Positions 18,901 through 54,100 of a DNA stretch of 64,000 nucleotides are shown here, piece by piece. Below the pieces are notes generated by a model, which searched no databases, was not told the DNA's origin, and saw only the letters and a list, made by a program, of their open reading frames with translations. Both the position numbers and the translations under genes were made by a program. Each line of letters opens with the position of its first letter. Position 1 is the first letter of the stretch. Origin of the DNA: Phallusia mammillata (lineage: Eukaryota); contig OZ281497.1 of assembly GCA_965637545.1 (NCBI GenBank), positions 28,520,001 to 28,584,000 of the forward strand, in the 5' to 3' direction.

Positions 18901-21900
18901 TTTGCAATTTACAACTGCATAGCCATCCCTGCCCATATGTCATTTCATGCCAATTGTCGTTTTTGTTTTAATTTTTTTTTTGCCTGCAGCTAATATTTGA
19001 CAACATTTTTTCTCATTTTCTAAACAACTTGGATGCATCTTTTTTAGTTATTCAAATTCACTATAATCTCTAACATTAGGTTGTAGCTGACATGGCCCAC
19101 AATAATTTTCTTGCCCGAACAATTAACAAAGCAAATAACTTAAAAACATGCAACTTTTTCTCGCTTGTCAACACAATGCCACCCTACAAACAAATAAGGT
19201 TTAGTGTAAAATTTAATCGTGGAAACAAGACCATGGCGTTAACACGTCGCTCCAAACAATGCAAGTAACTAAAAAAGATTTTTACCTGCACAAACCACGG
19301 TTCAGACCAATGTTGTATACATCATTCAGTTTTAGCTGGATCCAGCTATACAAGCTGAAATCCGAGCCAAACCCGACATTTTAATATTTAAAGTAAAGAA
19401 ATCTCGTTTTTGACAACAATTCAACTTTTTTACCTTGCAACAAGTACATGCTCTTTAAAGCAAAAAGTACAATTTTTTCTATTTTTAAATTGTTGCACAA
19501 GTTGTTCCCAAATTGTGTTTTTGTATGCAGTAACGTGAAAAAAATCATTTCAAAACATGCAAAAAACAATGCTATAATACTCACTATATTGGGTTAAGTT
19601 AGGGTTAAGTTTAACATTCACAACAAGGCGAAATCCAAAGTATTTTAGTTTACTTGAATTTGTCACTACGATAAACGTAATAATATTTGTTGGATTAAAA
19701 TCAGCTGAGGACACTTAACCTTACCGAAAACGAAATCGACAAGATGGAAGCAGCTTCACTCTCCCCTTGCCTTCACAACATGGAAGAACTTATACTGGAG
19801 GGTTGTAAGATCGGAAGCGAAGGGGTCGAGAAACTATGCGAGGGGGTGAAAAGGCTAACAAAGCCGGTAAAACCAAAATTTAAGCATTGCATAAACCGTG
19901 TTAGTAAAACTGCAATTTTTCTTCACAGTTATTTTTGTACTGACAAACTTAGCAAATAGTTGTTGTCCAAGGGCAAAAGATTTTTCAATTTAAGGAAAAT
20001 AATGTCTTGTCTAGTAAATATATATTTGTGACGTCAGAATTGCATTTTGTCTTCACAACTAAAGGGACATATGAATTAACTCAAACAATAAAAGACCTTT
20101 TTGTTCCGTTAATTGTTTGAGTTGGCAATATACAAAAGTCAAGCCATCCTGCCGCACATGTCAGTCCATAAATATTTTTCCTTTCTTTTCCATTCTCACA
20201 GCATGAAGCCTCTATTTTGAGAAATCAGTTTCACAAAGTAGCAGTATGGGTGGATTTGTTTGCAACAATTTCAAAAGTGTACAAGTCTAATTTCAACAAA
20301 CAGGTTGACATTTGACAACAAATTGTCCTCATAACAATGTGCATGTAACGCATTTCACTACACTGGTGGAACTATTTCCAACATATTGTTGTAATTGAAC
20401 CACTTTTTTCAAAAAAATGAACGAAGCAAAACAATAACATTTAAACTTTTAAATATCCTTACAAGCCGATACTGCCCGACATCAATATTTTTAAACAAAC
20501 AACTTTGTCACAGCTTTTTTGTGCATCTAGCGTGACGGACAACAACGCATTGTGAAACAAACGTAATTATTTTACTCATGTGTTGCTATAACACCAAGTC
20601 GCTCGACACATGCACAAGGTCTGATATTAATGTTGTCGGTGAAACACGGCCAGGCGTTAGCACATCATTTTAGCAAAACCTAATATTTACAAATATCAGA
20701 CCCTGCGTTCAAGCAAAGTTGTAAACGGATCTCAAATAGGTCCAGCCGGAAAATAAAATCCAAAATCCTGCCTAAACCCGACATTATGCTAAAATAAAAT
20801 CGTAATTAGGCCAAAACTTAGATTTACTAAAGCCATAAGTACCCTAGTGTCAATTCAGGCCGCCTCTAGCCCGTTTTATTTAAAAAACTGAAACCTAAAC
20901 AAGCACATGACCCGAAAACTTTTTTTTTCTTTTTCTAACTTTTTTTCGTTTCTTTATTTTGAGTTTATTTTTTCTGAGTAAAACAAATTTAAAAATTAAC
21001 AACAAGGCGTAATTCGAACTAAATTTGTCTGTTTTGTTTACTGGCATGATCACTGCGATAAATGTAATTTTATTTGTTGCTTTAAAATCAGCTGAAGATA
21101 CTCGACCTCTCCGACAACGAGATCGGCAACACAGGAGCTGCTTCGCTGGATCCTAGCCTTCACGAAGAACTTATACTGAAAATGTGTGAGATTGAAAGTG
21201 AAGGTGTCAAAAAACTCTGCGATAGAGTAAAAAGGATAACGAAGCCGGTAAAACCTTGTGAAATTTAAAAACACTTACATAAACCTGTATTAGTGAACTG
21301 TTAATTTCCTTTAAAGGTATATTTCTTACTGATAACTGGTAATAATGTCATTTTGTCCAGTAAATATAAAATTGTGACTTAAGAATCTAATTTTGTTCGA
21401 AAAAGACTTTGAATAACCTCGAACAGTGAACGACAAGTGAGAAATTTAAACATTATTTTGTTTCTATTTTTTTTACATATCAGAATGATAACTTGAAAAA
21501 GCATTAAAACATAAACTTGAAAAAGCTCTGAAAGCCCCTAACCCATACAATGATTTTAATATAATCTTTATATTTTACATGAAAGCATGTGTCAAAGTGT
21601 GTATTTTTCTTTTACTCTATATTTCTGTGTTTCAACGACTGTTTGTGTTGCTTTCTTACTTAAATGACTCAGAAACATCGTCTCTGCACCATAAAGCTTC
21701 TAACGCTTTATAACTTAGTTGTTTCCGGCGCTTCCGAACGGATTCTTACAACATTTACGTACAAAGCACTCGAACAACGCTTGCTTCCATCGTTAGTTCT
21801 ACCTTTCTCTCTTTCTCTCTCCCTCTTCTCTCTACATGACTCGGATATGTGGACAACACCGCTTCAATGTTAGATACACAAAGAGGTACAATTGCATTAA

Positions 21901-24900
21901 AATATAGTACACAAACAAAAAAAAATACTGGAAGTCAAAGCACAATCTAGTTATGGGAAACTACGTAAATGCCGTCTTGGTGTGCGATACAATAAGAAAA
22001 TAACAATATTCGTATGCGATCATTACAAGTGACGCAACAGACCAAAGTTTCAATCCAAGAAAGGCCTTTTGGATCGGTTTTAAACATATTTTTTATGTCT
22101 GCAGCAGGGATATAATCGTGTTGTCCATATTTTTGTCTGTTGGTTGCAATTTCAATTGAAATCTATGCGTTTTATTGAAATTTATTCACAAGACTAAATT
22201 TACAAAAATGTCCACTGAATATGAAACTTTCTATTCAACCATTAATATGGCCATGTTTTATTCGAGTAAGTTATAGTCATAGATAAAAATTTTAACAAAA
22301 ACTAAACCAGTTCACAGATTAGTCACACTTGATTTTAACATTATTTCAGTAATGAGGTTTTGTGTGTAGACTTTCAGTTTTTCAACTAATACTTGCTGCT
22401 TTATTTTGTAAAAAAATAGTTAATAGCTAGATCAAAAAATACTATTACAACTCCAGTAAAAACACTACTTTTTTCACTTTTAAGCCATGTGCTTGCCGTG
22501 TGCAACTAAAATGAATCTTAAGGTCAGGACGTAACAAAGAGTTATAAAACTCGTTGCTGCGAAGCGCACAGCCTCGTCGTAGATAACGTTATGGTCCACA
22601 TACAAAAATTAATATTGCCGGTTTACCAAGGCGGAAATCATTCTTTTTATATATTGCTCAACCATAAAAAATTTGTGATGGATGTTATTTGTAATATAAT
22701 AGTACATCAAGTAAAATTATCTAGGGGGTGCTGCAGCCTCGCAGCACCCTAGCACGAGACGCCCCTGCAAGTAAAACAAGCCATTCTACCCCACATGTCA
22801 GTCCATAACAATATTCCGTAGTTTCAGCATGAAGTCTTCACTTTAGGAAACAAGTTTCACTTCGTTACACTAGAAGGAAATTTGTTTGCAGTAAATGTAA
22901 TTAAGACTAGTTTCAACTAAGATTTTTTCTTTATAAATGAACGAAGCAAAACAATAACAAGCAAACTTTATTAAGAAAAAATGCCGATACTGTCACTCAT
23001 ACAGACATCAACATTTTTGAACAATTCCTTTTGGCAGCATTTTTGTATCTAGCACATACGAATACACAAAAATGCGCAGTGAAACAAACGTGCAGCGCAT
23101 ACTTGTTTTGCTCATGTGTTGCTATAATACCAGGTCACCGAGAAACGCACAAGGTCTAATGTTAATGTTATCAGTGAAACAAAGCCAGGCGTTAGAACAT
23201 CATTTGCAAAAAATAACTTTTATATATTTTAAAACCTGGAATCAAGCAAGAGTTGAAAACATGTCTGAAATTAGGTCAACCTGAAAAAAAAAAAAAAACT
23301 TCAGCCTGACTTACAATTCTGGTTCAGGCAATACAGCAACACACACACACCTTTTTTTTCTTTCTTTATGTTGAATTTATTTTTCTGGGTAAAACAATTC
23401 AAACATTTAAAACAAGGCGTAGTCCGAAAGTGTAGTTGTTACTGCAGTAAATGTCATTACATTTGTTGCCTTAAAATTAGCTGAAGATACTCGACCTCTC
23501 CGACAACAAGATCGGCAACACGGGAGCAGCTTCACTCGCTCCTTGCCTTCACAACATGGAACAACTAATATTGCGGAAATGCAACCTTGGAAGTGAAGGC
23601 GTCGAAAACATCTGCGATGGAGTCAAGAGTCTAAAAAAGCCGGTAAAGCATCTTGAAGTTTGAAACTTTCAAAATTTCATCAAATTATTTTTGAACCTTG
23701 TCAATCTGATTTAAGGGTATATTTTATACTGAAAGCTGTTACTTTAAAATAGTTTCGGAAGCTTACGAAAATAATGTCCTTTTGTCTAGCACAAATACAT
23801 GTGTGATGTCATAATTAAATTTTGTCTTCGCTATACAAAGTGTCATTGATGTAGTTCGAATAGTGAACAAACGAGATACGCAAAACATTATGTTGTTCCT
23901 ATTTTACTTGCGTGAAAGAATGATAATTGTATGATGTCATGTAAGATGTCCACGAAAGTTACTAGGTTCGTTTCCATGTACTTGTGTTTGTTAAAATGTC
24001 CGACAGAATCAAACAAAAACGACATATGATTTCAATGGAAGTTTTGCTTCAAACATTTTTTCTTTAAAACGTAAACTAAACAGAAAAACAAATAAGCGTT
24101 TGTTTGCAATGAAATAAAATTGTTTAGTCGGAAAAGTGCGATCAACTAATGTTAAGCTCATGCGCCGACAAAAACTCTGTTTGAAATCATTCAAAATATT
24201 ACATTCATTTTTGTACTAAAATCAAGTCAAGCATTTACCACTAGGCGTAATCTGAAGTTATGCTGTGATATCTTTTTTTATTTACCAGTATTTGTCATAG
24301 CGATAAATGTAATAATGTTTGTTGCATTAAAATCAGCTGACGAGATTCGACCTCTCCCACAACAAAATCGGAGAAACAGGAGCAGCATTACTAGCCCCTT
24401 GCCTTCAAAACACGGAAGAACTTGTTCTGGTTGTATGTGGGATCGGTATTGAAGGAGTAGAGAAACTCTGCGATGGAGTGGAAAAGCTAACAAAGCCGGT
24501 AAAAGACGTATATTATTTTATAAGTGGTTTACAAGATTTTATGTACTTGCAAACGCTACAATCTGTTTATTCAAACCTAATCTTAAATAAAAAAACATGT
24601 TTTTGTTTTAGTAAACCTGTAATATGTTAAGCTTGTAAATGTTCGTTATAGGTATTTTTGTACTGACAACAAGTACTTTGAAATAGTTATCTTGGTCGCG
24701 ATCGATTTTTAAATGTTAGGTTATGCTAGTCACGAAAATATACCGTTGTTGCATCACAATTCAAATTTGTCGTCACAATAAAATAAGTTCATTATTTCTT
24801 TGCAATAATAAACACTAAAAACAACATAATATGTAAAAGACACAGTCATCATGTTGTCATATAAATTTGCATGGTGTGGTAATTAGTATTAACAAAAACA

Positions 24901-27318
24901 CTGAACGCTTTATGCAAGCACATAAGGAATAATCACCAATTTACAAAAAACAGTTTTGAAAATAGGTTCGGTACATTCATTTAAAAGCGAAAAAAACCTG
25001 TTAATTTTTTTACCTGTTTATATGAAACGACACATCGGTGACAAACTGTGCAAAAATCTTTGACCCCCCACCCAAAACGCCGTGATTTGTATTTGTCTCA
25101 ACAATGTAACCTTGAAAAGGCAGGGTTCTGTTTATTGCCTGAATTTTCTTTTTGTCTTGTCGTACGTAGGTGCTGACTTAGTTTCCGCAATTAGGTCTCG
25201 TAGTATACCCACAGTGTCAGTTAATAACATTTAATTGACTCCTGCAGTCTGCAAGCTATTAACTTCTCATCAAGTTTTTAAAGCATTGTACCACATAAAG
25301 CCATGAACTATGCAAGCAATGCATATGTTTGGTACAGTTTACCTGATTTTTTTTTAATTTACAACATTTCAACAACAGGGTTATGTAAATTTGTGAAATC
25401 CATGCACTTGTGCTGGTCACAATGTCTGCACAGGGCGCATCCCGGGCACTGATACATAAATTTTGCTGCCGATTTATTAGTTCCAAATTTTGCGTCTTTT
25501 CTGTTTTATTCTTACTAAATAAAATCACACTTTGCTGGATAAGGCAGACTCACTCCATAAGAGAGTTGGACAATTTGTCTGCGGACAACATACGTCACTT
25601 CACACAACGCAGTTAACTAATGAAAGAAGTGTAACATTCAGGTGGGAATGTTATAGGTAAATGCGCTACTGCAGGGGTGGCCAACCTTCTACATACCATT
25701 CGCCAACTTTTTAACATACTGTGTTGGATGCGCCATAAATGTCTCGTAACCCCACCTTCTATGACTACTTCTTGTATATAGAGAGAAAAAGAAAGAAACA
25801 ACTTTTGCATGAGAAGGATAGTAATAAGAAATAAGAACTATTAAGTAAAAAATAACCGTAAAACCGTACAGAATATCTAAATTACCCCTTTGACATCCAT
25901 ATACCCCTAATCTAAATAAAATCGTCAAAAATATCCAAAAAACAAAAAGGAAGTGCGTCCCAGTTGCATGAAAGGGTTAAATTTCGAAAATACCTGCAAA
26001 TGTTCACAAACGAAAGACAATGCACAACGCACCAGGTAGGGCTACTAACACCATAACGAGAATCAGAACTTCGCTTTCACAAGGAGGCGTAAAGAGCTGA
26101 ATTTTCATTTAGGGGCTATAAATGGGTTGGGTTGGGAAATATCTACATAGAATTTTTACATTAGCAACTAATTTTTGGATTAATTTTATTGAATTTTATA
26201 TGCTAATACCTTACCCCGACCCTGAGCAATTTTGGAGATATAACCAATCAAATTTGGGGGCAGATTCTCGTTATGGTGTTAGTAGCTCTACCAACGCACC
26301 AACCGGAACGAGCCGCAGTTGCAAACTGACAAAAAATTCACCGTCAAGGATCGCCAGGTGCGGCCCATTTTTATTCATCACAACACTTCTTCTTCAGGCT
26401 AGTGAGCGATAGCGAGCTGATTAATTTGATTTTCATGATTATCAAAAGAAGGCTATGCGTCCTTTCTAATCATGCAATGCGCCACGTTTAGTGCATGCGC
26501 CATAGGTTGGCCACCACTGCGCTACAGCATGGGTGCACAACCTTTGAGCTATGACGGCGCATCACAGGTTCATACTTTACCAGCAGCCGCCAAGTGTGTT
26601 TATGCTTTCGTTTATATATTACTGATCCAAAGAAACAGGAATTATCTTATAATATCGAATCAACTAATTGCAAAAAAGGGGTCTAATAATGTTTAAACTG
26701 TTGTGACTTGAGATTAAAACATACAAGACAGATTAAAACACAAAGTTCTGAGACCGAAAATGCGCATTTACCTAGTTATTTATTTATTTATAAAGTGATT
26801 GTTGAAATATTAAAAGCGTATGATTTTTTATACACGGACACCAATTATATGCGTTCTAACTCAAATAATTTAAAACATGGTACTTAATAGATCGTAATAA
26901 GCTTTTTTTGGTAAATTTCGTGTGATTACAAACAATCGGAGCAGATCTGCAAAACCAGTAGTTGTTGGCGTATTGGTTTTATCTGGATCGTTAATTATTA
27001 TGTCTAGGTTTCCTCAGAAATATTTCTTTTACTTTACATCACGTGACATCTGTTTTTCGTGTGAAAAATGGTATTATGGCGTCACACTGTTTTGATTCGA
27101 TTTGCAACCAAGTCTTGTCACTTGCTTTTGACTACTTCTTGTTTCAGATGGAATTTCTGGATTTATCTTGGAACGAGCTGACAGATGAATGTGCTGAGTT
27201 ATTGGCACGATGTGTCCACAACATCAATGAGATGAATGTTTGGCCCAATAACTTCACAGAAGCAGGCAAGAACCTCATCAGATCAAAGTCGCAAGGAAAA
27301 GTTGTGTTTAAATACTAA
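15719..27318 (+). CDS. NLR-1: multi-exon NACHT-LRR (NOD-like receptor) gene, 1021 aa, join(15719..15955,16155..18170,19705..19866,21092..21247,23481..23642,24337..24498,27148..27318)
   Basis: ATG at 15719 (MGNQVVK). All six introns are GT-AG, phase 0 and keep the frame open to TAA 27316-27318. NACHT motifs: Walker A GQAGIGKTT, Walker B VMIFDGFDE, FTSRP, FSHLIWQEFF. These are followed by RI-like LRR exons. Confidence 0.88.
15979..16092. repeat. Perfect 15-bp inverted repeat inside NLR-1 intron 1
   Basis: CAAGAAGTCGTCGAT (15979-15993) / ATCGACGACTTCTTG (16078-16092). Confidence 0.9.
16155..18170 (+). CDS. NLR-1 NACHT exon (672 aa)
   Basis: Acceptor ttttctttgtgtag|GAA is in frame with ORF 16257..18191. 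Donor CCG|GTAAAA at 18171. Complete P-loop NACHT motif set. Confidence 0.93.
19705..19866 (+). CDS. NLR-1 LRR cassette exon 1 (54 aa)
   Basis: aaaatcag|CTG...CCG|gtaaaa; LRTLNLTENEIDKMEAASLSPCLHNMEELILEGCKIGSEGVEKLCEGVKRLTKP. Confidence 0.9.
21092..21247 (+). CDS. NLR-1 LRR cassette exon 2 (52 aa, in-frame 6-bp deletion)
   Basis: aaaatcag|CTG...CCG|gtaaaa; LKILDLSDNEIGNTGAASLDPSLHEELILKMCEIESEGVKKLCDRVKRITKP. Confidence 0.88.
23481..23642 (+). CDS. NLR-1 LRR cassette exon 3 (54 aa)
   Basis: aaaattag|CTG...CCG|gtaaag; LKILDLSDNKIGNTGAASLAPCLHNMEQLILRKCNLGSEGVENICDGVKSLKKP. Confidence 0.9.
24337..24498 (+). CDS. NLR-1 LRR cassette exon 4 (54 aa)
   Basis: aaaatcag|CTG...CCG|gtaaaa; LTRFDLSHNKIGETGAALLAPCLQNTEELVLVVCGIGIEGVEKLCDGVEKLTKP. 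Confidence 0.9.
25672..26519 (+). mobile_element. Non-autonomous hAT (Buster/Charlie-like) element in the last NLR-1 intron
   Basis: TIRs CAGGGGTGGCCAACC / GGTTGGCCACCACTG; 8-bp TSD CGCTACTG / CGCTACAG (7/8). Confidence 0.8.
27148..27318 (+). CDS. NLR-1 terminal LRR/cap exon (56 aa + stop)
   Basis: Pyrimidine-rich acceptor ttcttgtttcag|ATG; MEFLDLSWNELTDECAELLARCVHNINEMNVWPNNFTEAGKNLIRSKSQGKVVFKY*; paralogous to 55597..55761. Confidence 0.88.
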   Translation: MEFLDLSWNELTDECAELLARCVHNINEMNVWPNNFTEAGKNLIRSKSQGKVVFKY

Positions 27319-27381
27319 AGTAATATCTGAACATTTGTTTGCATAAAAATCGCAAAAAAACTTATGTGGAACAAGTTTTAC

Positions 27382-27387
27382 AATAAA
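27382..27387 (+). terminator. Candidate polyadenylation signal of NLR-1
   Basis: AATAAA about 64 nt after the stop codon; not conserved at the equivalent NLR-2 position. Confidence 0.3.
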
Positions 27388-29177
27388 TACAGTGAATCAA
27401 TGTGACACTATTTCATCATTAATGGCGGCATTGGTCACTGCCTGAACGTCCGATGGAAAAAGTCTCTTGTCTACTCTCTGTGTCAATATATTTCACGATT
27501 ATTAATTTTCATGTTTGTTTGAAACATTATTATTTGCAATTAACACTGACAAGCACATGCACCGAACATCAGTGAGTATTTTGCATCAACCTAAAAAAAA
27601 CTCATGTTTTGTGTCAAACCGATTTTATGCATAACCTGATGGAAAACCCGCACTGCATTTGGCTTGCTGAAGAAATTGTAATCTTATACATAATTGTCAA
27701 TGTTGTGATATGTTGTTCCACCATTTAATTCTGCACATTATTTTTACGTCGATTTTATTGCTTTGTATTAACGTCGTTTATAGCGGTTTGCTTTTGTGTT
27801 TTTTCCTGCAAAATGACGAATTTAGTGCCCCTTCAGTTTCTTGCTTCAATATCGTGAAGTAAATTTTGACGTCACGAACTCTGCTTTTAAATCCACATCG
27901 GTTGAATACCCTAACGCTACGAAAATAAATGAGATATCTGACCAATTTTTACTTGGAAATAAATGTTTCTATGCTTATCTTATTTGAATTCTGCGACTTA
28001 GAACTAAATATTGCATTATTGAGATGTTTTTGTTGCAAATGCCTGATAGATTATTCAGATGTATATAAACGTATAAACACCGGTAAAACAAAAGTTACCA
28101 TTCTTATCACTTGTGTTCTGCAAACGCCAGTGTTGTTAAATATTGTGTTTTTTTCTGCTTCTGTTGTTCGCCATGCTTTTTTTACTGACGTCACTGAGAT
28201 AAAACTTTAAACCCAACTTACCGGTCTGAGACCCAAACCATGAGACGTGTTTCCAACTTTTCAATATGTGACACGTTAAAAAAACAATTTTTTAACTTAC
28301 ATCGGATTTTGTATTTAAAATTCGGAATTATTCAAACATCTCGCAAGCAATCCAGCGGCGTCTCTATCGTTAATTTTGTTTAATTGTTTTTTGACAAATT
28401 AAGTCGCTTGTATATATAATGAGTGTCCTCTGCTTTTCGTAGCCTTTCTGTATTGTATATATGTGCATATTGTGTTGAACTGTTTCCTTTATTCCGTTTT
28501 TTATTTTATTTATCTAATGTTTCCTGCGTCCCTGCTGACCTATTTAGCAAGGGACACCACCCTACTTTGTACACTATACTGTCGTAACTCTCCGCTTGAA
28601 GTGTTTATCTGCACAACCTAAATTAATTGTGAACATCGTTATTAGCCCTTATAATTTATGCCATTTTTGGTTCCTGACTGTTTTTGTAACACTGTTAATC
28701 AATGGAGACGACATGATAATTTGTTTTATCCGCCGGTGGTCACTTGCTAAGGCGGGGAGGGGGCCACGCAAATAAAAAAGACGTTATTCTAATCATTAGA
28801 ATCTAATGCATATTTTTTGTGACATTTCGACAAAACAGTCATCAGGAAACATGTGACCCAAGCAGTAACGACTTGATAAACAACAAATATAGAAATATCA
28901 GATTGTGCAATACTAATAGGCCAAACCAACAGTTGTGTGTATGGCGGGTTCAACAACAATCGGTTCAGGGCCGCGAGAAACAAGTTTTGTGTTAATGGTG
29001 TTACACAGCTCGACGATATTTTTCAAATCAGAGCGAGTTGGAAGGTTCAGTAGGCGGCATAAATCTGGAATATCCAGGCAAAAAAGAATTTTTTTTAAGC
29101 CGAAGTATTTTCTTTGTAAATTAAAAGTTTTTTAACTGTTAACACGTCAACTAGTAGATCACACTTTTGAAGAATTA

Positions 29178-29232
29178 TCTTTTCCGACACTCTAGACTTT
29201 TCCGACACTTTATCTTTTTCGACACTCCAGGA
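29178..29232. repeat. Three-copy short tandem repeat
   Basis: TTT(C)CGACACT repeated three times at about 20-bp spacing. Confidence 0.75.
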
Positions 29233-29801
29233 TTTTCTGAGTGCGTAATATCTAGTCTCAACTGATCAGCACATATATTTATTGTTGTATTAACTTATAT
29301 CTGTTCAAAGATATCAAAAGCAACGTACAAACGCCCGGAATTGCAGAGAACACATTTTAGTCGTTTACTTATTTAAGGTTTTATATTTTTGCCGTGGAAC
29401 TTGTGTAAATTGTCCTTTGATGAGATAAATTGACTTCAACCTAGTATATTTTTGCATGACAAGTGGACTAGGGTCAGGGTTAATGAGAGAAGAAAAATAT
29501 GCTGGTGCAAGGCAACTTCAGTCTTCCCCCCCTGAACACTGTAGAAATTTTTAGAATAGTTTCTTCAGTTGCACTATAGTTTATGCACAGATTATCAAGC
29601 ATTTAATACGTTCATTTGTCAATCGGAACATACAAAAGTAATGGCAATTGACACTCATTAAACAGGTTGGGCAAGAACGTCAAACCTATTTTGAAAACTT
29701 AAAATGCCAATATTTTACGGCATGCGCTAGAGCGTTTATACAGCAAAGTAAATGCTTAAAAGCAAATAATTGGTCTTTACATGTACTGCGTACGCTTAAA
29801 C

Positions 29802-29870
29802 CAGGGGTCACCCAACTACAGCCTGCGTACTTCGAGGTCATTTCATCCGGCCCACGACCACATATTGTGG
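29802..29870 (+). mobile_element. Solo left end of a hAT MITE
   Basis: CAGGGGTCACCCAACTACAGCC..ATCCGGCCC preceded by GCTTAAAC; no partner TIR found. Confidence 0.45.
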
Positions 29871-30459
29871 TTTGCCGTACCGTATGCATACCTTTGCAAC
29901 ATTTAAAAATTAGTTTACTGCTTACGAAAGTTTTTCTGTCATGACATGTACAATTAAGGTTATCTAGCTTCATAGGATTAAAACGCTCTTTAATGCAAAT
30001 TTAGTTTGTTATATCACAGAAAGTACTACATTCCCTAATTGTGAACAAACAATTCATTTCCAGGAGTATATGACGACAATGTGGAAAAGTTTACTAGGTT
30101 AAAATCAAAATTTACCTTTAAATTGGAAACCACTGTTTTAACTATCGTGGTTATCAGCGATTTTTCTGCACAATTTATGCGATTTAGTGCAACGGTTTTC
30201 CTGGGTGGTCAGTGTGAGTTATTTTTTAACAAAAAAAAAATAACCAAAATTTAAAAGTTCTAAAACCAGTTGTTGTCAAGTGCAATTGTTCCCCTCTGTT
30301 TATTTCACTACGCAAAATGAACTCAATTCACAAAGATAACAACAAACTACAAAACTCGGATGTATACGAAGGAGATTAAATGTTATTACAAAAGCATTGG
30401 GTCGTTAAATGTTTTCTCATTAGCTGGCGAAACAAGACATTATTTGTCGAAACCCTAGA

Positions 30460-30945
30460 AACAGTCTGCAGCTGAGGGCACATTTTTTAGCATTACATCT
30501 GACACTAAAGACGGCATTGATACAGACTCGCTCCAAAAAGAGGAAGAAAAAGAAGAAGGAAAAGAAGAAGATGGACAAGAAGAAGACGGAAAAGAAGAAG
30601 ATGAGGGAGAACCTTTGTCAGTAGAAAAAGATAATTCAGATGTAGACTTAGCCAATCTCTTCAAACCACAGAATACAAAAACCAAAACAAAAAGAAGCAA
30701 CAGTAGCTCGGGCGAGAAGCCCAGAAAGAGAAAGAAACCAACCCAACACAAGAAAAAACAGTTTCTTTTCCCACAGCTACAAAACACTTTAGTAAACTTT
30801 TACAAACCTCCATCCTTTTGTAAGATGGCGAATATTACCTCAATTAATATAAACGGACTTAACCGTAAATTAAACTATTTGCAAACTTTCACAGAAAAAG
30901 ATGACTCTGATATTTACTTATTCAGGAAGTACATGTGGTCTCAAA
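30460..30945 (+). mobile_element. L1/Tx1-like LINE fragment (ORF1 tail and start of ORF2 AP endonuclease)
   Basis: Acidic then basic low-complexity tract, then TAAGATG (ATG 30825) MANITSININGLN..DIYLF(QEVH) after a 1-nt frameshift; resembles APE motifs I-II. Confidence 0.6.
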
Positions 30946-30999
30946 ACCTTAGTTGTATTTGCAAATCACGATTAAACTACTAAAAGTAGAACCTCTAGT

Positions 31000-33950: not shown

Positions 33951-33970
33951 TATATATATATATATATATA
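33951..33970. repeat. (TA)n microsatellite
   Basis: Direct reading of a TA run. Confidence 0.9.
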
Positions 33971-44200: not shown

Positions 44201-46307
44201 CGTTTGTAAACCCGAAGGTTCAGTGGCTGATCGTGAAATCAAAAATACCCATGATGCATGTGGCTAAAGATTCTCCTTGTTTGTGGTGATGTGGCACTAT
44301 TATCGAAACGAATTTTAGTTGTAATTTATTCAGTTTCAATCTAAACTCTCCGTTCCACGTCTCTTGTGGTCAGACAGTATGTCTCGATCGGTTGGTCGGC
44401 GGTCCACCATGTTACATTGTGGTGAACTTCTAATTACATATAGTATCGTGTATTGCAGACCTTCACAACTCCAAACCATGCAAGGGCCGAAACAAACTAT
44501 TTTTTGTTACAAGCTGCATGATAACGTTGTTACAACATTCGTACAATGTGACCGAAAGATATAGCTGATTACGACAAAACAAACAACCATTCAAAAATAA
44601 ATATCACTAACAATCTACATAAAGATAAACACAAATTTCTGCATAAAACACAAATTTCTAAAATCAAAAAAAATCGACAAGGTTTAACTCTAAGCACATA
44701 TATTTGCTGACAGGACATTACCTGCGCTGACCATGCACGACAGCAAGACTTGATCCGCCCATCTACCACTCCATGGTCCAGTTTCTCTTGGTCAAGAAGA
44801 AATGCGGTGAGCTTTTGTGTTGCTTATTTGCAGAGATTAGCTTTTTCCCTCACCACCATATCGCAGTCTTTTTTAACCTGCGCCAAAACGGTCAACAAAG
44901 AAATTTGCAAAGCTAATTCAATCCGTAGATTTCATATAAGTTAGAATATCCATTTATGACTTGATTTAGTAGGTCTTGTGATTAGGTTACACAACACAAA
45001 TTTATTGCCGAAAACGGATTTTGTAACGCACACCGCCCAGTCAAACATATCACTTGTTACCTGCACGTTCCATGGGCTAATGGTTGGTTTCCTCAAATTT
45101 TTTTTTCATCCTAAAGTAGTTAGAAAAATCCGTTTACAGTATTGGCAATATACGGCAATATAGGGTAAGCAAAGCTCCGGTTCGTTAGCAATTTTATTGC
45201 CGCCTCATATTAACGCCATTACAAAAACGTGATTAAATGTTCAGGGATTCGTTTAAGTTCTGTGATAGACATAACATTGGTGCGACCAGGACATTGAAGT
45301 GGTCCACTTGCAAAACGTTTATCATAATGAATTTGCAACTAATCCTGGTGCAATCTGAAATACATTCGGTTTAGTGAAATCAACGTCCACAAAGTAGGAG
45401 CCAAAGTCAATTTTGTGTTTCCGACCAGCGTGACTACCAGAGCCATCCAAGGTAGACAATAAGTTTGTTTCTCTCGATTTTAGACTTCGCTCTCTTAATT
45501 TATGAGTTTAATTCTTACAAAAACACCTGGTCGCCATTTAAGCCTCGTGAAATAGTTTCTTGTTGAGCAAACGTGCTGAAATATCAACTGTAATCACAAA
45601 AATGTACATTGCCATGTTTTATGAGCTGCTCACTAGGTTTTTTTAGATAAAAAGTCGTGAAGATATTTTTATAAAATATACCAGTTCGCAAACAAAGTAC
45701 AACTCCTATTTCTAACCACACATGCTGTGCATTGTTACTTTGCGTGGAAGTTACGCAAATATGGCATTATGCCTAGTTGTGTGCGGTTATTGACATTGCC
45801 CACGTCATCGTTTAACTGCCTACATTAGGATTTGATTTAAAGAGTTGCACTGGTTCACTGACGTTTTTTTCTATATTATTGAAATAAGTTCAATGACACA
45901 ATTTTCAGTCCTTTGTGGTTGCGTGATCTTTTATGATTTAGTGATGAGGACGTCAAAAATTATGTTTTATTTGTGTGCAGACTACAATTTTCTCGTCTGT
46001 TGCAAGATATCAAGAAATTAACAGCCTGTGCTCTGGTGCGACATCCAGCGGCGTACGAGAAAAAATACGAAAAAATACACAGAGGTCAAACTCTAGATTG
46101 TAGAGGACATGAACAATAAAGGCAAGTGATTTGACTATCTGTTTTAGCGAAATGTTACAATTTCCAGGACTTCGCTTTTTACAGAGTTCGACGCACACAC
46201 ATTCACATTTGTACGCTTCTTTATTCATTGTATAATTTGCAAGCGTCTAAACCCATCTCTTGACATTGTTGTACACCTCTTAAACCTTTAAATTTTGTAG
46301 GCCCTGA

Positions 46308-46433
46308 CAGTGTTTTTTTAAGGTGTTTTGGGGGACCGAAACGGTCCTACAGTTTTTGGTATTTAAATGAAACACTTGCGGTCTCTTAAAACTACTTGAC
46401 GGTCACTCAAACCAAACCTTAAAAAAAAACCTG
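46308..46433 (+). mobile_element. 126-bp MITE with 8-bp TSD
   Basis: TIRs CAGTGTTTTTTTAAGGT / ACCTTAAAAAAAAACCTG; perfect TSD GGCCCTGA. Confidence 0.8.
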
Positions 46434-48769
46434 GGCCCTGACATTATTTGGTAACTCCCTGCGTTTGTTGCACGCAGGTTCTGGTTCGCTGCGCCCGAGG
46501 AAAAGTCAATTACTACCTGCATTAAAGCGCAACAAGCCCCGACAAATGACGGCCACTTGTTAATTTCCCATTTTTTCTCCAGCTGTCCCTCAGTAAGTGC
46601 TAAGGCCAGTATAGGTCTCTGACGTTCACTCTGAGCGTCCATAAAACCCGCAGAGATAAAGGCGTTGCACAGCAACCTGGGATGACGCGAGAAATTAACT
46701 TGCGTTTGCAGTTATTTTGAAAGAGATTGCTTGATATTAGCTGTAGAACGCAATTTGTTTAAAGATCAATTAAGATTTGATTGCGTAGGTCCACATCTAA
46801 AATTTACTTCAAAAACTGCAAATGCGATGCAACCACAACTTCGATGCGTTTTAAATGTTCTCACCCTTGTTAAAATCGGCCCAAGATTGAGTGAATACTT
46901 ATGTTGAGCGAAACAGCGATGTCCAATTCATGCTAGTTATGTATGTGTATTTCCGTATCAGTGTATTTGGTCGAATAATTTGCTTTTTTTAAAGTATTTG
47001 TTGTGTCCTGGTGTTAAAACTTACGTTTACTGGTCGAAAGCGTGGAATACGAGTGACGTTATAACAAATTAGCCTGATTTGACCGAATTTATTGGTGAAA
47101 AACAAATTTAGTTAGTGCATTTTATGTACAGGTCGTTTAATTGATTTCGACCTTTTATAATTGTTGTCAGTTTACAACAATACTTGCGTGCAGATAACAA
47201 CATAGCGTGACACATAGTTAGTGACAGTTGACGCTTGTGGTGACCGCTATCTATTTTTTGTGAGTTAAATGTCATCACCAATCATGTCGAACTGATTAAC
47301 GTGAATAGTACGTGGCTGTTTTTGAATTTACTGATCCTGTTTGTGTGATTAAATTTTGGAACAATCCTATGTTGATTTGACAAATTGAAAAAATCACAGA
47401 AGCCTTATTTTCTATTTGCAGACCGTCATTGGCTTTCTCAAAGTTAAGCTCTGGTGGGACCTAGCAGTATGTCACTTCTTGATGTGACAAAGCCCGAAAA
47501 GGAAATGCTCCAATACCGACACATTGTGTTGGATCAGGGAAATTAAAGTGGGGTATTGAAAAATTTAATACAAAAAGTTGCATAATTGAAAAGTTACGAT
47601 CTATTTTGGTTAATAATTACAGCAATAATAAAAAGTTGCATCATGCAGTAGACTGTACATAAAAATGTAGTTGGGTTGATTGTTACCAGTATGAACCTTC
47701 AGTAAAATTAACGTAGTGTTTATATTAATGACGTTGTACAGTCTACATTACATCAAAAATTTTTAACTACGTACATTTGTTGACAGACTTTTACCTGTCG
47801 GAAGTGCAAGTTATGATCTGCCCAATAGTTTTACTAGATTGTTATGTGCATTACAGAATTTTAACATTTTGGGTACGAAAGTAAAAACTTCATTATTGGG
47901 ACATAATATGATTTCATGTTTACTGGATCGGGGTCAAACATTGTTTGATTTTGCAGAAAAGAATTACTCAGTTTTTATGCTGTAAACAAAGATAATTTAC
48001 GTTGCTGTACATGTCTGCTATGCGGATTGTTACAGCAACGTGTAAAAATCTAAAACTAAATTGCCATGGAACAGACAGTTTACAACGTTGCGTCCTCGCA
48101 TCAAAACTAGATCATTACGATGTATGTGAGTTAAACATGTAATAGAAAAACTGAATTCATAGTTTTGACATTTTTTTGTAGCAAGTTTAGATGCTGACTT
48201 AAAACAAGGATAACTATGGTCTTAGTTGATTTTCACACGTTTTAGGTTAATTTATTTCGTAACGTACAATGTATTTTAATGACTATTTTCAAAAACAATT
48301 ATTTAGTCTATCTGAACATGTTGCTTTTTTAGACTAAGGAAATTTTTTTACGATTTTATGATACTGTAGCAACTTTGAATCTCGTCACCATTCTAATACG
48401 AGGTTTACTGCGTGGTTGATAATTTGTTGTGTTTGGGTAGACTGAACATTATTAAATGATATATGCTTTCGAGATGTGTTTTGTTTAACGACGCGGATTG
48501 TACTACGCATCCACATTTTTTTGAGTGTTTTATCAAACATGTGTTTCACTTTGTCAGGTTTAGTTTGTTTTTGTTTTTGTTCGGCAATTATTTCTTTTTT
48601 AGATATAGGGCTATATTGTTGTAATCAAATTTTAATTATCTGGCCAATGTTGTATCTGTCAATTGTTTTTGAAGTCAACAAGCAAACGGACGAAAAAGAA
48701 ACCGTGTAAGTGTTACATATCAGTTAACATGAAGACAAAACTCCTGAAACAATTAACAAAAATCAAATA

Positions 48770-51166
48770 ATGGGCAATAACGCATCTAAAAAACATTCAT
48801 CCCGAAAAAGGGAGGAACAAGTAGCCAAGTCCAACAAGTCCCGAAGACCTGAAATCCAACCAAGCTTGTACCGAAGATTAAGCAACGCTGAATCCCAATC
48901 CAACTTGTTCCAAGGACCAAATAATGCTGAACAACCCGGCTTGTCACAAGGAAAAGGTGATGTTAAATCCCAACCTGGTTTGCCACAGGGACAAGGTGAT
49001 GCCAAACCCACATCCAGTTTGATACAAGGACCAGATTATGCTAAACCCCAACCCGGTTTGATCCACCAACCAAATGATGCTGGACCCCAATCAGGTTTGT
49101 TACAAGGACAAGGTGATGCCAAACCCACATCCAAGTTAATACAAGGACCAGATAATGCTGAACCCCAATCCGGCTTGACGCAAAGACCAAATGATGCTAA
49201 ACCCCAACCTGGCTTGCCACAAGGACAAGGTGATGTTAAACCCCAACCTGGCTTGCCACAGGGACAAGGTGATGCCAAACCCACATCCAGGTTGATACAA
49301 GCACCAGATAATGCTGATCCCCAACCCGGCTTGACCCAAGGACCAAATGATGCTAAACCCGAACCTACATTGGCCAAAGGATCACAAAGTACCATATTGC
49401 CTCCAAAGGCCACGAATTTAAATTGGCATGGTGACACACATATCTGGACACAAGGGCCAGTTATAGTGGATGTAACAACAAAGGAAACAAACGAAACACA
49501 TGAAGATGTTCAGTTTGTTGAAGATCTAATATCGTTGCTTAAAAAACATGTGGAAGCCATCGCTGGTGCAGAATCGTCTCTAGCAGATGTTGCCAAACGG
49601 AAAATAACACCAGTCAACCTTGCCATAGTCAGCAAACCACAACTAATTAACGACGAGTTTCAAGCAGAGGGGCATTATTGCCACAGAAAGGAACTTGTCA
49701 ACGTTTACAACATACCAACAGGTGACATAACCTATGAAGAAATGTTTGATGAGGCAAAAGATACAGCAGAAAAAGAAGCGGAAACAAAATTCTACCGGAA
49801 TGAAGAAAAGGCAAAACACGATTACGCGGAAAAACATGGAAACGTGGTCGGTGTGGTTGGACAAGCTGGAATAGGAAAGACGACCTCAGCAAAAACGTGG
49901 GCCAGGCAAGGTCTAAGGGGAGAGTTGTTCGGAGAGACTTCCTTCTTCTTTTACATTGTGATTAGGCACATCGACTTCACAAGAGAGATGACACTCCTTC
50001 AGTTTCTTCTCTTCACTATGGCGATAGAACAAGAATATACTTTAAAACAAGAAAAAGGCATTCTCAAAGCCGTTTGCAATGATCCAAACGTTGTGATGAT
50101 TTTTGACGGTTTTGACGAGGCACGTTTTAAATCTTTTTCCACAGAAGTTCCCCAGCCCCTACCACATTTCAAATCTAAAGCGGAAAACTACCTGAAGCAT
50201 TTAGTGGGAGGAAACTTGCTTCCACGTGCTCGGAAGATTTTTACGTCACGTCCTGCTCAACTATACAAACTCCATCCTTCATATAGACCAAGGTTTATTG
50301 TTCAAATACTTGGATTGACTCCAACATCACAAGATGAACTTGGACGTCAGATATGTGGAGACAAATACGAAGATGTACACCAACAACTTGAGCAAAACCG
50401 CAATGCATTTGCATACTGCTACGTTCCTGTCAATTTTATTTTGACACTTGTTTACTTGGTAAATTACAATGGAGATATTCAGTTTGTTTCACTCACTCGA
50501 GTCCTTGCTTTCACTTGTGGCCAATATCTCACAACCAATCATTTAAGGGGCCAAGAAGGTGAGTTGGACAAACTGGCGAAGTTGGCCTATGATGCATTTC
50601 TAAACATGGAGATCGTATTCAAAGCAATGGCATTCGTGAAAGCAGGCATCAAGGAATCTACAGCCGATGCATTTACAAACACGTCAGTCACAAAGCACGG
50701 GAATCTCAAGCTGACGATATTGGATGGTCACAAAGTTCGATATTTTTCTCATCTCATTTGGCAGGAGTTTTTTGTGGCTTTCTACCTGATGATGATCATC
50801 TCTCTAGACGAGTTTGAGGAAATCCTCAAACATTTTGTAGACGACAGATGGGAAGTAGTTTCTAAATTTGTTTTCGGGATTTGCGATCCTTCAGTTTTCC
50901 ATCAACTCGAGACTCTTGTTCCTGAGAGTTCTCCTAAGGATTGGAAGGAGAAGAAATCTTTGCTTATAAAGTTTATCCAGCATAAACCAAAGCTCAGTAA
51001 AGAAGAAATCTTACGAGATTGCAGCTGGGCTCATGAGTCAAATGACCTGGAAACTGCTTCATCTGTGGCCTCCCTACTTCCTGATGAGCTAGACCTTAGT
51101 AGATCATCTCTCCTTCCAGCTGACTTTGAGGGTCTTTCCTTCGTGATTCAACACAAAGAGACATCG
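48770..51166 (+). CDS. NLR-2 N-terminus + NACHT exon (799 aa)
   Basis: Uninterrupted ORF; GQAGIGKTT, VMIFDGFDE, FTSRP, FSHLIWQEFF; closely similar to NLR-1 across the NACHT. Confidence 0.95.
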
Positions 51167-54100
51167 GTAATGCTGTGATTTGTAATCAGCACTTTAGATT
51201 ACTGAGAAATATTTCCAAATATTTTTTTGGGATTCTATCTGCTCATTGTTAATTATTTGCCGCCAATTGATCAACATGTTTTGATAACGTCAATTTGTAC
51301 TAATATAATAAAAGGCACAACTGCGGAACTTCAACGTTCGCCTACAGCACCACAGCTATTCTATATCACTATAAACGTCACGAGGCCCAAAATCCCCAAT
51401 AAGGCAAGAAGTCAAAAAACTTCACATGACTTCAGTCCAATTATTTCCGACCATGTATACCCCCTATAATAATAGGAAACTATTTGATTAGCATGGGTAT
51501 ACAGAAAGTGACAATGTTGGTACACCATCATCACTAATGACGCAAGAGACCAAGAAGTTGTAGTCCAACTTGATCCAATGTGCTATAACGTCATGTGCAT
51601 CGGTAGCATGACGTACAATAACACAAAGTGACTCAAGTGTTGAGGGCGTACTTGTTTTACTGGAGTGTTGCTATAACAGGGCTCAACGCGTGTACAAGGT
51701 TCGACGTAAAGTTTATTTTTTACGCAAGTTCAAGCCGTTTTCACTTCATGACAAACAACACACTGCAAAAACTTGCAAAATAGTTTTTTAACCTAAAGCT
51801 AGCAAATATTCATTCTGACTAGAGTTGAAAACGAACTTGTCGAACCCGAAAGTAAGAAACCAAAACGCGCTTCTAACTCTTTTTTGTCACATAAAAATCT
51901 GTGTAAAGTCAGACCTGAATCTAGCCTGTTTTGAAGTCGGAACCCGAGCTCGGCCCACAACGCCCAACGCGACTTACATCGCTGCAGTGGCATGTTTTGC
52001 TTTAACAAGCGCTTTGGCCCTTATTCTTTGGTAATAAATAATGCAAGACATTAAAGCAAACTCATGTTGCCCAATAGCTTCCGGCAATTTGTTTGTACTA
52101 TGTAGCGTGTACTGCTGTTGTTTGATATTACCGAAATAGCTTTTGACGATTTGTCAAATTGTTTTTCATAATCGACCAATAGCAAGAGGCAGTATGCACA
52201 CAAAAAAACAGATATCAATTAATTCTTTCATTGCAATTAATCCTCACCTGTGTGACATAATAATAATAATAAAACAAACGATAAAATTATTTAGATTTTT
52301 TTCACCAATATGATACACTTTATTTTGCACTCATAACAGATAAATGATTCTAGGTAATTTTAGTAACATTTACAACAAGTCGTAATCCAAAGTTGTGCTG
52401 TCTATTTTTATTGACCTAAATTTTCCCGACGGTAAATGTGATGTTTTTTTATTGCAATAAAACTAGTTAAAGAAACTCGACCTCTCCGGCAACAAAATCG
52501 GTAACATGGAAGCAACTTCACTGGCTCCTTGTCTTTCTAACATGGAAGAGCTTGTTCTGAATGAGTGTTGTTTCGGAAATGAAGGCATCAAGAAACTCTT
52601 CGATGGAGAGAAAATCCTAACAAAGCCGGTAAAAACTTATACATTGACCACAATTTAACTTTCTCTCTTGCAAAGAGTAGATCCCTCATGAATGAATGTT
52701 ATTGTACGCTTTTTATGTTTTCTAAATAGCTTTTCTTGCTGCAATCAATGTGATCTTTTTCGTTTTATAAAAACCAGCTGAAGAGACTCGACCTCTCCGA
52801 TAATAAGATAGGCAACACAGGAGCAGCTGGCCCCTTGCCTTCCCAACTTCGAAGAACTTATTCTGTGGAAGTGTGAGATCGAAAGTGAAGGCGTCGAGAA
52901 ACTTTGTGATGGAGTGATGAAGCTATCAAAGCCGGTAAAAACTCATATTTTTGAGGATATTGAAATACATGTGAGCATGTCATTATTGTTGCTCGTCAAA
53001 TTAGGATCTTCTTCAGATGGCGGTAACAGGTCAAAAAATGTTTTCCAAATGTTTATGTCTATCTAACTTGCAAAATAATACTCGACATTTTGTGCACATT
53101 CATGACCAACGTATAATAACCAAACATGTATTTTTCATAACCAACCGCAGAACTAATCATGCTGCACATGTAAATTCGTGACATTTTTTTCTGTTTTAAT
53201 TTTTCATAACTTACGTTTAACTACATGAGAGATGTGAACAGTTTGTTTACCACAACGTGCTACTAAAAATCATTTATGCCGCTGGATATTAATATATTAA
53301 ATACAATTCATTTTTAAACGACCCTGCCCAGACTTAAAATTCGATTAACTTACAACATTAGACTTTTTTTGTTCGATATCATTACACTATGTTGCAAATA
53401 TGGTTGTATTTCGGGAATCGAACCACACCTTTTGTCGCAGAAAATGAACAAAGCAAAAAATGAGTGTGTATAATAAAATAAATATAACTTTCGTAGAAGG
53501 CGACGCTGTTGCTCAACACGTCCATTTGTTGTAACAAAAAATATTGTACAGCAGATTTTGCATCTAGCATGACTTCAACAACACTTACCGAAAAAAACGC
53601 ACACGTACTCCTTTCACTCCTGTATTGCAAAACAGTCTCGATGCACGTAGAGGCTTTGATGTAAAATAAATCATAAAGGCATTCCCAGGTCTGTCCAAGT
53701 AATCCAATAAACTAAAATTCTATAGGTAGCATAGAATAAAAAAATATAGGTAGCATTTGGGTTAATTTGATTCATTTATTTGAAAAAATACGTTAACAAA
53801 AAAGTTTGGAGCTTAGTTCACTTTTTTCCAAACTTTTGTTGCTACCTTAAACGTGAAACTTTTTTCGCATTAAAATCAGCTGAAGAGACTAGACCTCTCC
53901 TGGAGCAAGATAGGCAACACAGGAGCAGTTTCACTTACTCGTTGCCTTCCTTACATCGAAGAGCTTATACTGGAGAATTGTGCGAACGTAAGTGAGGTCG
54001 TCGACAAACTATGCGATGGAGTGAAGAAGCTAACAAAACCGGTAAAAACAAATTTATGTTTTTTTAAGGAAATGTTGCAATTATTTGAGCATGTTAGTAA

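What the first reader, a model, noticed from the sequence alone, without database searches (positions are those of the whole stretch)
19798..53978. Two-codon hypervariable window at the ligand-facing position of every LRR cassette
Seen: in the conserved frame E[EQ]L[IV]L-x-x-C, the xx dipeptide differs in all seven cassettes: EG (19798), KM (21179), RK (23574), VV (24430), NE (52560), WK (52866), EN (53973). Flanking codons are almost invariant. The residue before N in the first repeat also varies (E,D,D,H,G,D,W; W,F in terminal exons). Known: these x positions of LxxLxLxxN/C lie at or next to the concave beta-strand that diversifies in VLRs and plant NLRs. Inference: diversifying selection on ligand specificity.
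Basis: partly seen in the sequence, partly recalled or inferred. Interest (0 to 1): 0.75.

Follow-up and report, generated by a model that had tools for sequence, protein, structure and literature searches.

The report
Hypervariable patch in sea-squirt NLR repeats
Two neighbouring sea-squirt NLR immune-sensor genes build their sensor from copied 162-base exons that are alike except at three residues, which match the known binding hot spots of a related protein; this is a familiar way for innate receptors to diversify, here shown with modest statistical support.

Summary
The window holds two tandem ascidian NACHT-LRR (NLR) genes. Each has three or four duplicated 162-nt phase-0 exons, and each exon encodes two ribonuclease-inhibitor-type LRRs.

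**Variability.** Codon 8 has 5.

**Selection tests.** My own codon site models give omega of about 3-5 for 5-9% of sites and always pick 32, 33 and 35.
- M1a/M2a: p=0.03 (bootstrap 1/58).
- M7/M8: p=0.002.
- Other trees, a multi-hit model, a two-tree model, or dropping the frameshifted copy: p=0.04-0.06.
- Per-site tests are not significant.
- The cassettes have a mosaic (gene-conversion) history, and the local synonymous yardstick is thin.

**Structure.** The three sites are LRR motif positions 7, 8 and 10. They align with the hot spots Tyr434/Asp435/Tyr437 of human ribonuclease inhibitor.

**Wider family.** Read laying suggests tens to hundreds of similar cassettes genome-wide.

**Verdict.** Diversifying selection on a binding rim is probable but not proven, and no ligand is known. 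This is a new member of a known kind. The scan noted the same pattern at another NLR locus of this genome (s1-399083).

The parts
16155..18170 (+). Gene A, large exon with the NACHT domain (open frame from 16155; donor after ...AAA CCG at 18170, phase 0)
   Evidence: Pfam NACHT E=6.9e-17; 68% identical to Phallusia mammillata COS1.5; donor read
19705..19866 (+). Gene A LRR cassette 1 (54 codons, two LRRs); patch codons 32, 33, 35 = E, G, K (19798-19803, 19807-19809)
   Evidence: Pfam LRR_6 above cut-off
21092..21247 (+). Gene A LRR cassette 2 (52 codons, in-frame loss of codons 25-26); patch K, M, E
23481..23642 (+). Gene A LRR cassette 3; patch R, K, N
24337..24498 (+). Gene A LRR cassette 4; patch V, V, G
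27148..27318 (+). Gene A terminal exon (one and a half LRRs, stop at 27316-27318); first-repeat position 8 = W; its own positions 7, 8, 10 = W, P, N
48770..51166 (+). Gene B, large exon from ATG 48770 with the NACHT domain; donor after ...ACA TCG at 51166, phase 0
   Evidence: Pfam NACHT E=2.8e-16; 77% identical to gene A over 559 residues; donor read
52467..52628 (+). Gene B LRR cassette 1; patch N, E, C
52778..52934 (+). Gene B LRR cassette 2, 157 nt: a 5-nt deletion at codons 17-18 shifts the frame, so it is a likely pseudo-exon or skipped exon; patch would read W, K, E
53880..54041 (+). Gene B LRR cassette 3; patch E, N, A
55597..55761 (+). Gene B terminal exon (stop at 55759-55761); first-repeat position 8 = F; its own positions 7, 8, 10 = E, L, K

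Best explanation
The seven cassettes are paralogous exons of two tandem sea-squirt NLR genes. Each exon encodes a short (25-residue) and a long (29-residue) ribonuclease-inhibitor-type LRR. Duplication and gene conversion keep the scaffold alike (60-70% protein identity). Three residues of the long repeat (LRR motif positions 7, 8 and 10, i.e. x-x-C-x) and position 8 of the short repeat are driven apart by diversifying selection. In the folded solenoid these residues form a stripe along the rim where the beta-strands of the concave face turn into the helices. Ribonuclease inhibitor uses the same spots to grip its ligands. The stripe is therefore most likely the specificity-determining contact surface of a lineage-expanded family of cytosolic sensors. 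Shown: the anatomy, the variability, the position in the fold, and omega above 1 in random-site models at modest significance. Inferred: that the selective agent is ligand (pathogen or non-self) recognition.
For: Anatomy. Variability: codons 32, 33 and 35 have 6 of 7 residues different and codon 8 has 5 of 7, while 13 columns are invariant. Selection tests: M1a/M2a LRT 7.03, p=0.030, omega2=4.9. Parametric bootstrap under M1a: 1 of 58 replicates reached 7.03. M7/M8 LRT 12.3, p=0.002, and M8a/M8 6.6, p=0.005. Star tree, another topology, or dropping the frameshifted copy: LRT 5.6-5.9, p=0.05-0.06. Multi-hit model: 6.3, p=0.042. Separate trees for the two halves: 6.5, p=0.040. Every run ranks sites 32, 33 and 35 first (posterior 0.82-1.0). 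Summed pairwise pN at the patch is 0.68, against pS 0.41 for the rest and p=0.27 for the conserved intron flank. Structure: an AF2 model of the homologous Phallusia LRR domain (pLDDT 94) puts the strand at motif positions 1-5 and xx directly after it. Foldseek top hits are NLRX1, RI, NLRP3 and NOD2. A phmmer alignment puts the equivalent R-F-C-N of the Phallusia protein on Y-D-T-Y of pig RI, the experimentally confirmed hot spots (PMC9939524). Wider family: six paralogous contig pieces read RE, VK, LG, KR, RG and RG at xx, and the aligner breaks exactly at codons 28-38.
Against: There are only seven sequences of 54 codons, and one is frameshifted. Several LRTs are borderline (p=0.04-0.06). Site posteriors are naive empirical Bayes. 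Per-site FEL is not significant (site 32 p=0.19, site 35 p=0.055, site 33 estimated negative). Path-averaged synonymous differences inside the patch codons are also raised (pS 0.60), so with a local yardstick omega is only about 1.5. The 5' and 3' halves give negatively correlated distances (r=-0.43), and 74 of 136 informative site pairs are incompatible, so no single tree is right. No ligand, expression or splicing data were obtained. Positions 7, 8 and 10 are x positions of the LRR consensus in all LRR proteins, so some variability is expected without adaptive pressure.
Confidence: 0.6

Rival explanations
1. Relaxed constraint only. Positions 7, 8 and 10 of the long repeat are loop residues with no structural role that drift neutrally (omega about 1). 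After dS of about 0.6 they are simply saturated, and the apparent excess over 1 comes from model error with seven short sequences.
For: These are x positions of the general LRR consensus (PMC2747839). Per-site tests are not significant. Local pS in the patch codons is 0.60. Several LRTs are at p=0.05-0.06. With all 54 sites neutral, three or more sites with 6 or more residues would occur with P=0.34.
Against: M8 beats M8a, which includes a neutral class, at p=0.005. M2a beats M1a in the bootstrap, with 1 of 58 replicates reaching the observed value. A neutral site reaches 6 or more residues in 7 copies with P=0.038. With the roughly 11 neutral sites of the M1a fit, three such sites have P of about 0.01 (my arithmetic). 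The other exposed x positions of the same strand (2, 3, 5) are nearly invariant.
Confidence: 0.27
2. Genealogy artefact of concerted evolution. Gene conversion keeps homogenising the scaffold on both sides, so flanking dS is young while the central dozen bases keep an older divergence. The high dN/dS is a ratio of two different ages, not a faster non-synonymous rate.
For: The history is mosaic (half-cassette distances r=-0.43, 74/136 incompatible site pairs). The 42-nt intron flank is as conserved as the exon. Paralogous contigs align to one cassette on the left and another on the right of the patch. pS is raised inside the patch.
Against: Conversion tracts would have to stop repeatedly on both sides of a 12-nt window whose central Cys codon stays conserved. 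The two-tree model still gives omega of about 3 at the same sites. Keeping old diversity against homogenisation would itself need selection for diversity.
Confidence: 0.1
3. Decay. The genes, or some cassettes, are pseudogenes and the differences are random damage.
For: Cassette 52778-52934 carries a frameshift. A degenerate LRR fragment lies on the minus strand at 28254-28409.
Against: Overall omega is 0.45, and 0.3-0.4 outside the patch. There are 13 invariant columns. Both NACHT exons are open, with omega 0.29 between them. All seven cassettes, the frameshifted one included, keep AG/GT splice sites, and the other six keep phase 0.
Confidence: 0.03

Closest known systems
Ribonuclease inhibitor (RNH1; PDB 1DFJ, 1A4Y) and its hot spots Tyr434/Asp435/Tyr437
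   Same: Same LRR subtype (Pfam LRR_6, alternating short and long repeats, Cys or Asn at motif position 9). The hot-spot triad occupies motif positions 7, 8 and 10, the same i, i+1, i+3 pattern as codons 32, 33 and 35 (PMC9939524).
   Different: RI is a single conserved gene with known ligands and no NACHT domain. Here the triad recurs in every second repeat and differs between copies. Repeat lengths are 25+29 residues, not 28+29.
Vertebrate NLR genes with two-LRR exons (NLRP/NLRC; zebrafish NLR-B30.2 family)
   Same: NACHT followed by RI-type LRRs, with one exon per pair of repeats and in-frame exon boundaries (PMC2747839). The zebrafish family is also a large lineage-specific expansion shaped by gene conversion (PMC4852459).
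   Different: In zebrafish the LRRs are reported as not particularly variable, and the positively selected module is the B30.2 domain (PMC4852459). Here no B30.2 domain was found, and the LRR itself carries the variable patch. The exon is 162 nt, not 171 nt.
Brown-algal LRR-ROCO genes with shuffled LRR exons
   Same: Near-identical LRR exons with symmetric phases, duplicated and shuffled. PAML M1/M2 and M7/M8 pick a few sites on the concave side (PMC11378527).
   Different: One 72-nt phase-2 exon per single LRR, a ROC-COR rather than NACHT core, a different LRR subtype, and alternative splicing of the exons was shown there but not tested here.
Podospora NACHT-WD (HNWD / het-d, het-e) family
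   Same: A NACHT protein whose repeats are kept alike by concerted evolution while a few codons per repeat, at the interaction surface, are under positive diversifying selection (PMC1805685).
   Different: WD40 propeller repeats within one exon, a fungal allorecognition function, and four sites per repeat.
Plant NLRs with highly variable LRRs, and lamprey VLRs
   Different: Plant LRRs are of another subtype and encoded in large exons. VLRs are assembled somatically from flanking cassettes. Here the cassettes are ordinary spliced exons of complete germline genes, with no sign of somatic assembly.

Membership tests
Animal NLR (NACHT-LRR) | NACHT NTPase domain with a Walker A motif | tested here: met
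   Pfam PF05729 at E=6.9e-17 and 2.8e-16, above the cut-off. GQAGIGKTT is present in both genes.
Animal NLR (NACHT-LRR) | Winged-helix and helical domains after the NACHT (NOD2_WH, NLRC4_HD2) | tested here: inconclusive
   The hits fall in the right place but below Pfam cut-offs (21.8 and 18.4 bits).
Animal NLR (NACHT-LRR) | C-terminal ribonuclease-inhibitor-type LRRs | tested here: met
   LRR_6 is above the cut-off in 5 of 6 intact cassettes. A profile of the cassettes hits NOD2 and RI chains. The homologous Phallusia domain folds as an RI/NLR horseshoe.
Animal NLR (NACHT-LRR) | One in-frame exon per pair of LRRs | tested here: met
   Cassettes are bounded by AG and GT, and the six intact ones keep phase 0 at both ends (four of 162 nt, two of 156 and 162 with an in-frame loss in 21092); the seventh, 52778, is 157 nt and breaks the frame. 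The layout is described for NALPs in PMC2747839. Splicing itself was not observed.
Sites under positive diversifying selection | Site models with omega above 1 fit better than their nulls | tested here: met
   M2a vs M1a p=0.030, M8 vs M7 p=0.002, M8 vs M8a p=0.005, bootstrap 1/58. The result weakens to p=0.04-0.06 under other trees and models.
Sites under positive diversifying selection | Individual sites significant with their own synonymous rate | tested here: not met
   FEL-type test: site 32 p=0.19, site 35 p=0.055, site 33 not positive. Power is very low with seven sequences.
Sites under positive diversifying selection | Result robust to recombination | tested here: inconclusive
   A mosaic history is shown. 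A two-partition model keeps the signal at p=0.040. No full breakpoint analysis was possible.
Sites under positive diversifying selection | Selected residues exposed on the binding surface | tested here: met
   Motif positions 7, 8 and 10 follow the strand directly and align with RI hot spots (PMC9939524). Coordinates of the model were not available to compute accessibility.
VLR-like somatic cassette assembly | Incomplete germline gene completed by copying flanking cassettes | tested here: not met
   Both genes are complete in the germline. The cassettes are exons with splice sites in gene order on the coding strand. The source runs hold the locus colinear (table 8).

The most novel reading that the evidence does not exclude
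The 162-nt cassettes form a genome-wide pool of tens to hundreds of copies that exchange by gene conversion. In this reading each copy carries its own three-residue specificity code, and whole loci are present or absent between individuals. That would be a germline-diversified LRR repertoire in a chordate without adaptive immunity, comparable to plant highly variable NLRs or fungal HNWD genes, and possibly serving pathogen-specific or allorecognition functions.
Probability: 0.15. Interest if true: 0.7.

Novelty: new member of a known kind. Interest (0 to 1): 0.4.

Why it matters
Large NLR expansions occur in many animals without adaptive immunity, but it is rarely clear which part of the protein reads the ligand. 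In the zebrafish family the LRRs are not variable and a B30.2 domain carries the diversity (PMC4852459). Here a sea-squirt NLR family keeps a conserved LRR scaffold and concentrates its differences in a three-residue patch at the ribonuclease-inhibitor hot-spot positions. This gives a small, testable handle: swap the patch and look for changed binding partners. It would help answer whether animal NLR LRRs act as direct, diversified recognition surfaces. My literature searches found no paper on this in tunicates.

Tried and rejected
- **Word-based protein search with the cassette alignment:** no hit, so no further cassettes could be collected from the protein collection.
- **Degenerate DNA pattern for the LDLSDNKIGNTGA stretch in JGI metagenome contigs:** no hit.
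- **Flanks of the nearest ENA relatives (L001, L002):** they hold only distant cassettes, about 30% alike to each other, which are useless for dN/dS.
- **AlphaFold on one isolated cassette:** pLDDT 61 and all-helical, so discarded. The natural Phallusia LRR domain was folded instead.
- **Bootstrap runs:** the first hit the time limit and the second failed on a missing interpreter name. The third gave 58 replicates.
- **Per-site FEL:** too weak to decide.
- **One-to-one orthology of cassettes between genes A and B:** rejected. The tree is star-like with bootstrap support of 43-73, and the two halves disagree.
- **The joined (spliced) protein models of genes A and B:** neither searched nor folded.
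Full report
**What is there.** The window is from an ascidian (sea squirt). The large exon at 16155-18170 is 68% identical to the Phallusia mammillata protein COS1.5. The window has no N runs.

Two NLR genes lie in tandem on the + strand.
- Each has a large exon with a NACHT domain: 16155-18170 and 48770-51166. Pfam gives E=7e-17 and 3e-16, and the two exons are 77% identical.
- Both exons end in phase 0 at a GT donor.
- Gene A is followed by four 162-nt exons and gene B by three. Each gene ends with a short terminal exon: 27148-27318 and 55597-55761.
- An nhmmer profile finds exactly these seven cassettes and nothing else in the window.

Each cassette starts after AG and ends before GTAAA. 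The six intact ones keep phase 0 at both ends; 52778, at 157 nt, does not. Each encodes a 25-residue and a 29-residue LRR of the ribonuclease-inhibitor type. Pfam LRR_6 is above the cut-off in five of six intact copies. A profile of the cassettes hits NOD2 and RI chains.

Two copies depart from the standard.
- Cassette 21092 lacks two codons, in frame.
- Cassette 52778 has a 5-nt deletion that shifts the frame, so it is a pseudo-exon or must be skipped.

Each exon was used on its own, by reference.

**Check of the observation.** Codons 32 and 33 each have six different residues in seven copies, and their neighbours E27, L29, L31 and C34 are invariant.

The patch is therefore x-x-C-x. Codon 8 of the first repeat has five different residues. 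No other column has more than four.

**Is it more than chance?**
- Overall the cassettes are under purifying selection. Mean pairwise dN is 0.23 and dS is 0.63. M0 omega is 0.45.
- The NACHT exons give dN 0.13 and dS 0.46.
- I wrote a codon maximum-likelihood program and fitted the usual site models:

| Comparison | LRT | p | Notes |
|---|---|---|---|
| M2a vs M1a | 7.03 | 0.030 | omega 4.9 in 5.5% of sites |
| Parametric bootstrap under M1a | - | 1 of 58 | replicates reaching 7.03 |
| M8 vs M7 | 12.3 | 0.002 | |
| M8 vs M8a | 6.6 | 0.005 | |

- Sites 32, 33 and 35 are always the top three, with posteriors of 0.82-1.0. Site 8 comes next.
- Simulation at omega=1, at the cassette's own synonymous rate, gives six or more residues at a site with P=0.038.
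- Summed over all pairs, pN at the patch is 0.68. That compares with pS 0.41 in the rest of the cassette and a p-distance of 0.27 in the conserved 42-nt intron flank.

**Caveats.**
- The signal weakens to p=0.05-0.06 with a star tree, with another topology, or without the frameshifted copy.
- It is p=0.042 when double and triple hits are allowed.
- The cassettes are mosaics. Distances in the 5' and 3' halves are negatively correlated (r=-0.43), and 74 of 136 pairs of informative sites are incompatible. With separate trees for the two halves, the test still gives LRT 6.5, p=0.040, at the same sites.
- Per-site tests with a site-specific synonymous rate are not significant.
- The few synonymous sites inside the patch codons also look fast (pS 0.60).
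- A fixed-partition test gives omega 5.2 for the three sites (LRT 16.4), but the sites were chosen after seeing the data.
- Taken together, omega above 1 is the better-supported reading, but seven short sequences cannot settle it.

**Position in the fold.**
- An isolated cassette does not fold on its own in AlphaFold.
- The homologous LRR domain of the Phallusia NLRC3-like protein P0027 aligns with the cassettes at 39-46% identity. It folds with pLDDT 94.
- In that model each strand covers LRR motif positions 1-5. Positions 7, 8 and 10 lie in the loop that leads from the strand to the helix.
- Istomin and Godzik (PMC2747839) place the aaLXLaa pattern, which includes positions 7-8, on the inner concave surface, followed by the C-terminal side loop.
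- Foldseek matches NLRX1, RI, NLRP3 and NOD2.
- In the phmmer alignment to pig RI, the R-F-C-N of the last P0027 repeat lies on Y-D-T-Y. Those are residues Tyr430, Asp431 and Tyr433, equal to human Tyr434, Asp435 and Tyr437. PMC9939524 cites them as the experimentally confirmed hot spots.

**The wider family.**
- Two runs of one study hold the locus exactly and are probably the source individual.
- Two runs of other studies with the same species label hold none of the unique intron sequence. They show only paralogue-like matches over the cassettes.
- Summed contig depth over the cassette exons is 35 to about 270 times that of the single-copy introns (tables 2 and 8). This is no copy number, but it points to tens to hundreds of similar cassettes.
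- Many paralogous contigs align to one cassette on the left and to another on the right, with an unalignable stretch over codons 28-38. The six printed stretches read RE, VK, LG, KR, RG and RG at xx, and L, K or R at motif position 5.
- This sample is biased towards copies that break the alignment. Even so, it shows that the patch is the most diverged part across the family.

**Mechanism.**
- Most likely (0.6): duplication and gene conversion maintain a common scaffold. Selection for new binding specificities drives positions 7, 8 and 10 of every long repeat, and position 8 of every short repeat, apart. The result is a variable stripe on the rim of the concave face.
- Rivals: neutral drift of unconstrained loop residues (0.27), an age artefact of concerted evolution (0.10), and decay (0.03).

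**Comparison with what is known.**
- A conserved repeat scaffold with a few positively selected surface codons is known from several systems: plant NLRs, brown-algal LRR-ROCO genes with shuffled LRR exons (PMC11378527) and the Podospora NACHT-WD family (PMC1805685).
- The two-LRR exon is the standard NLR layout (PMC2747839).
- In the large zebrafish NLR family the LRRs are not variable (PMC4852459), so an animal NLR family that diversifies its LRRs has some interest.
- I found no paper on this in tunicates.
- The scan has already noted the same pattern at another NLR locus of this genome, 1.3 Mb away (s1-399083), and a cassette array 2 Mb away (s1-394846). These are AI notes that agree with my reading and are not independent evidence.
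- Verdict: a real feature, a new member of a known kind, of moderate interest.

Noticed in passing
window 52778-52934: This cassette has a 5-nt deletion at codons 17-18 and so breaks the frame if spliced in. The intron before it is only 149 nt. Whether it is skipped, is an assembly error, or makes gene B a pseudogene is open, because reads were laid on gene A only.
   Followed up: partly
window 19600-24600 (runs X3, X4): Contigs of two other studies with the same species label hold none of the unique intron sequence of gene A (zero depth at 21437-21603 and 23775-23941). This suggests presence/absence variation, a very diverged haplotype, or a cryptic species.
   Followed up: no
42 nt upstream of each cassette (e.g. 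19663-19704, 24295-24336): The intron flank before every cassette is about as conserved as the exon (mean p-distance 0.27), with a shared ...GATAAATGTAAT...TTTGTTGC.TTAAAATCAG pattern. A further shared block (ACAACAAGGCGTAATCC) lies about 100 nt upstream in several copies. So the duplication unit includes intron sequence, or the flank carries a splicing signal.
   Followed up: partly
window 28254-28409, minus strand: A degenerate, frameshifted LRR fragment (KRLNLSKN / NKINDRDAAGLLARCLNN) lies in inverted orientation just downstream of gene A. It is probably a dead cassette.
   Followed up: partly
window 16155-16260 and P0001 residues 92-115: The N-terminal motif QAPQIGDTNIHTTGPVYNAP is almost identical between gene A and Phallusia mammillata COS1.5, although the sequence around it is poorly conserved. 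Gene B has only a weak echo (GDTHIWTQGPV). Another note of the scan calls it RHIM-like (s1-375489).
   Followed up: no
window 10709-11868, minus strand, within the 46% G+C block 10000-14000: Open frames of 167 and 182 residues look like a retroelement polymerase (motif YGLPKIHK...PLRPIV, recognised from memory). They have no Pfam hit at E of 0.01 or better. They lie upstream of gene A.
   Followed up: partly
window 48770-49500: Gene B starts with MGNNAS, a possible myristoylation site. It then has a long low-complexity stretch of repeated 'Q/P-G-D-A-K/E-P-Q' units that gene A lacks.
   Followed up: no
window 16500-18170 vs 49100-51166: dS between the two NACHT exons varies from 0.27 to 0.74 in 60-codon windows, which may mean gene conversion between the two genes as well.
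   Followed up: no
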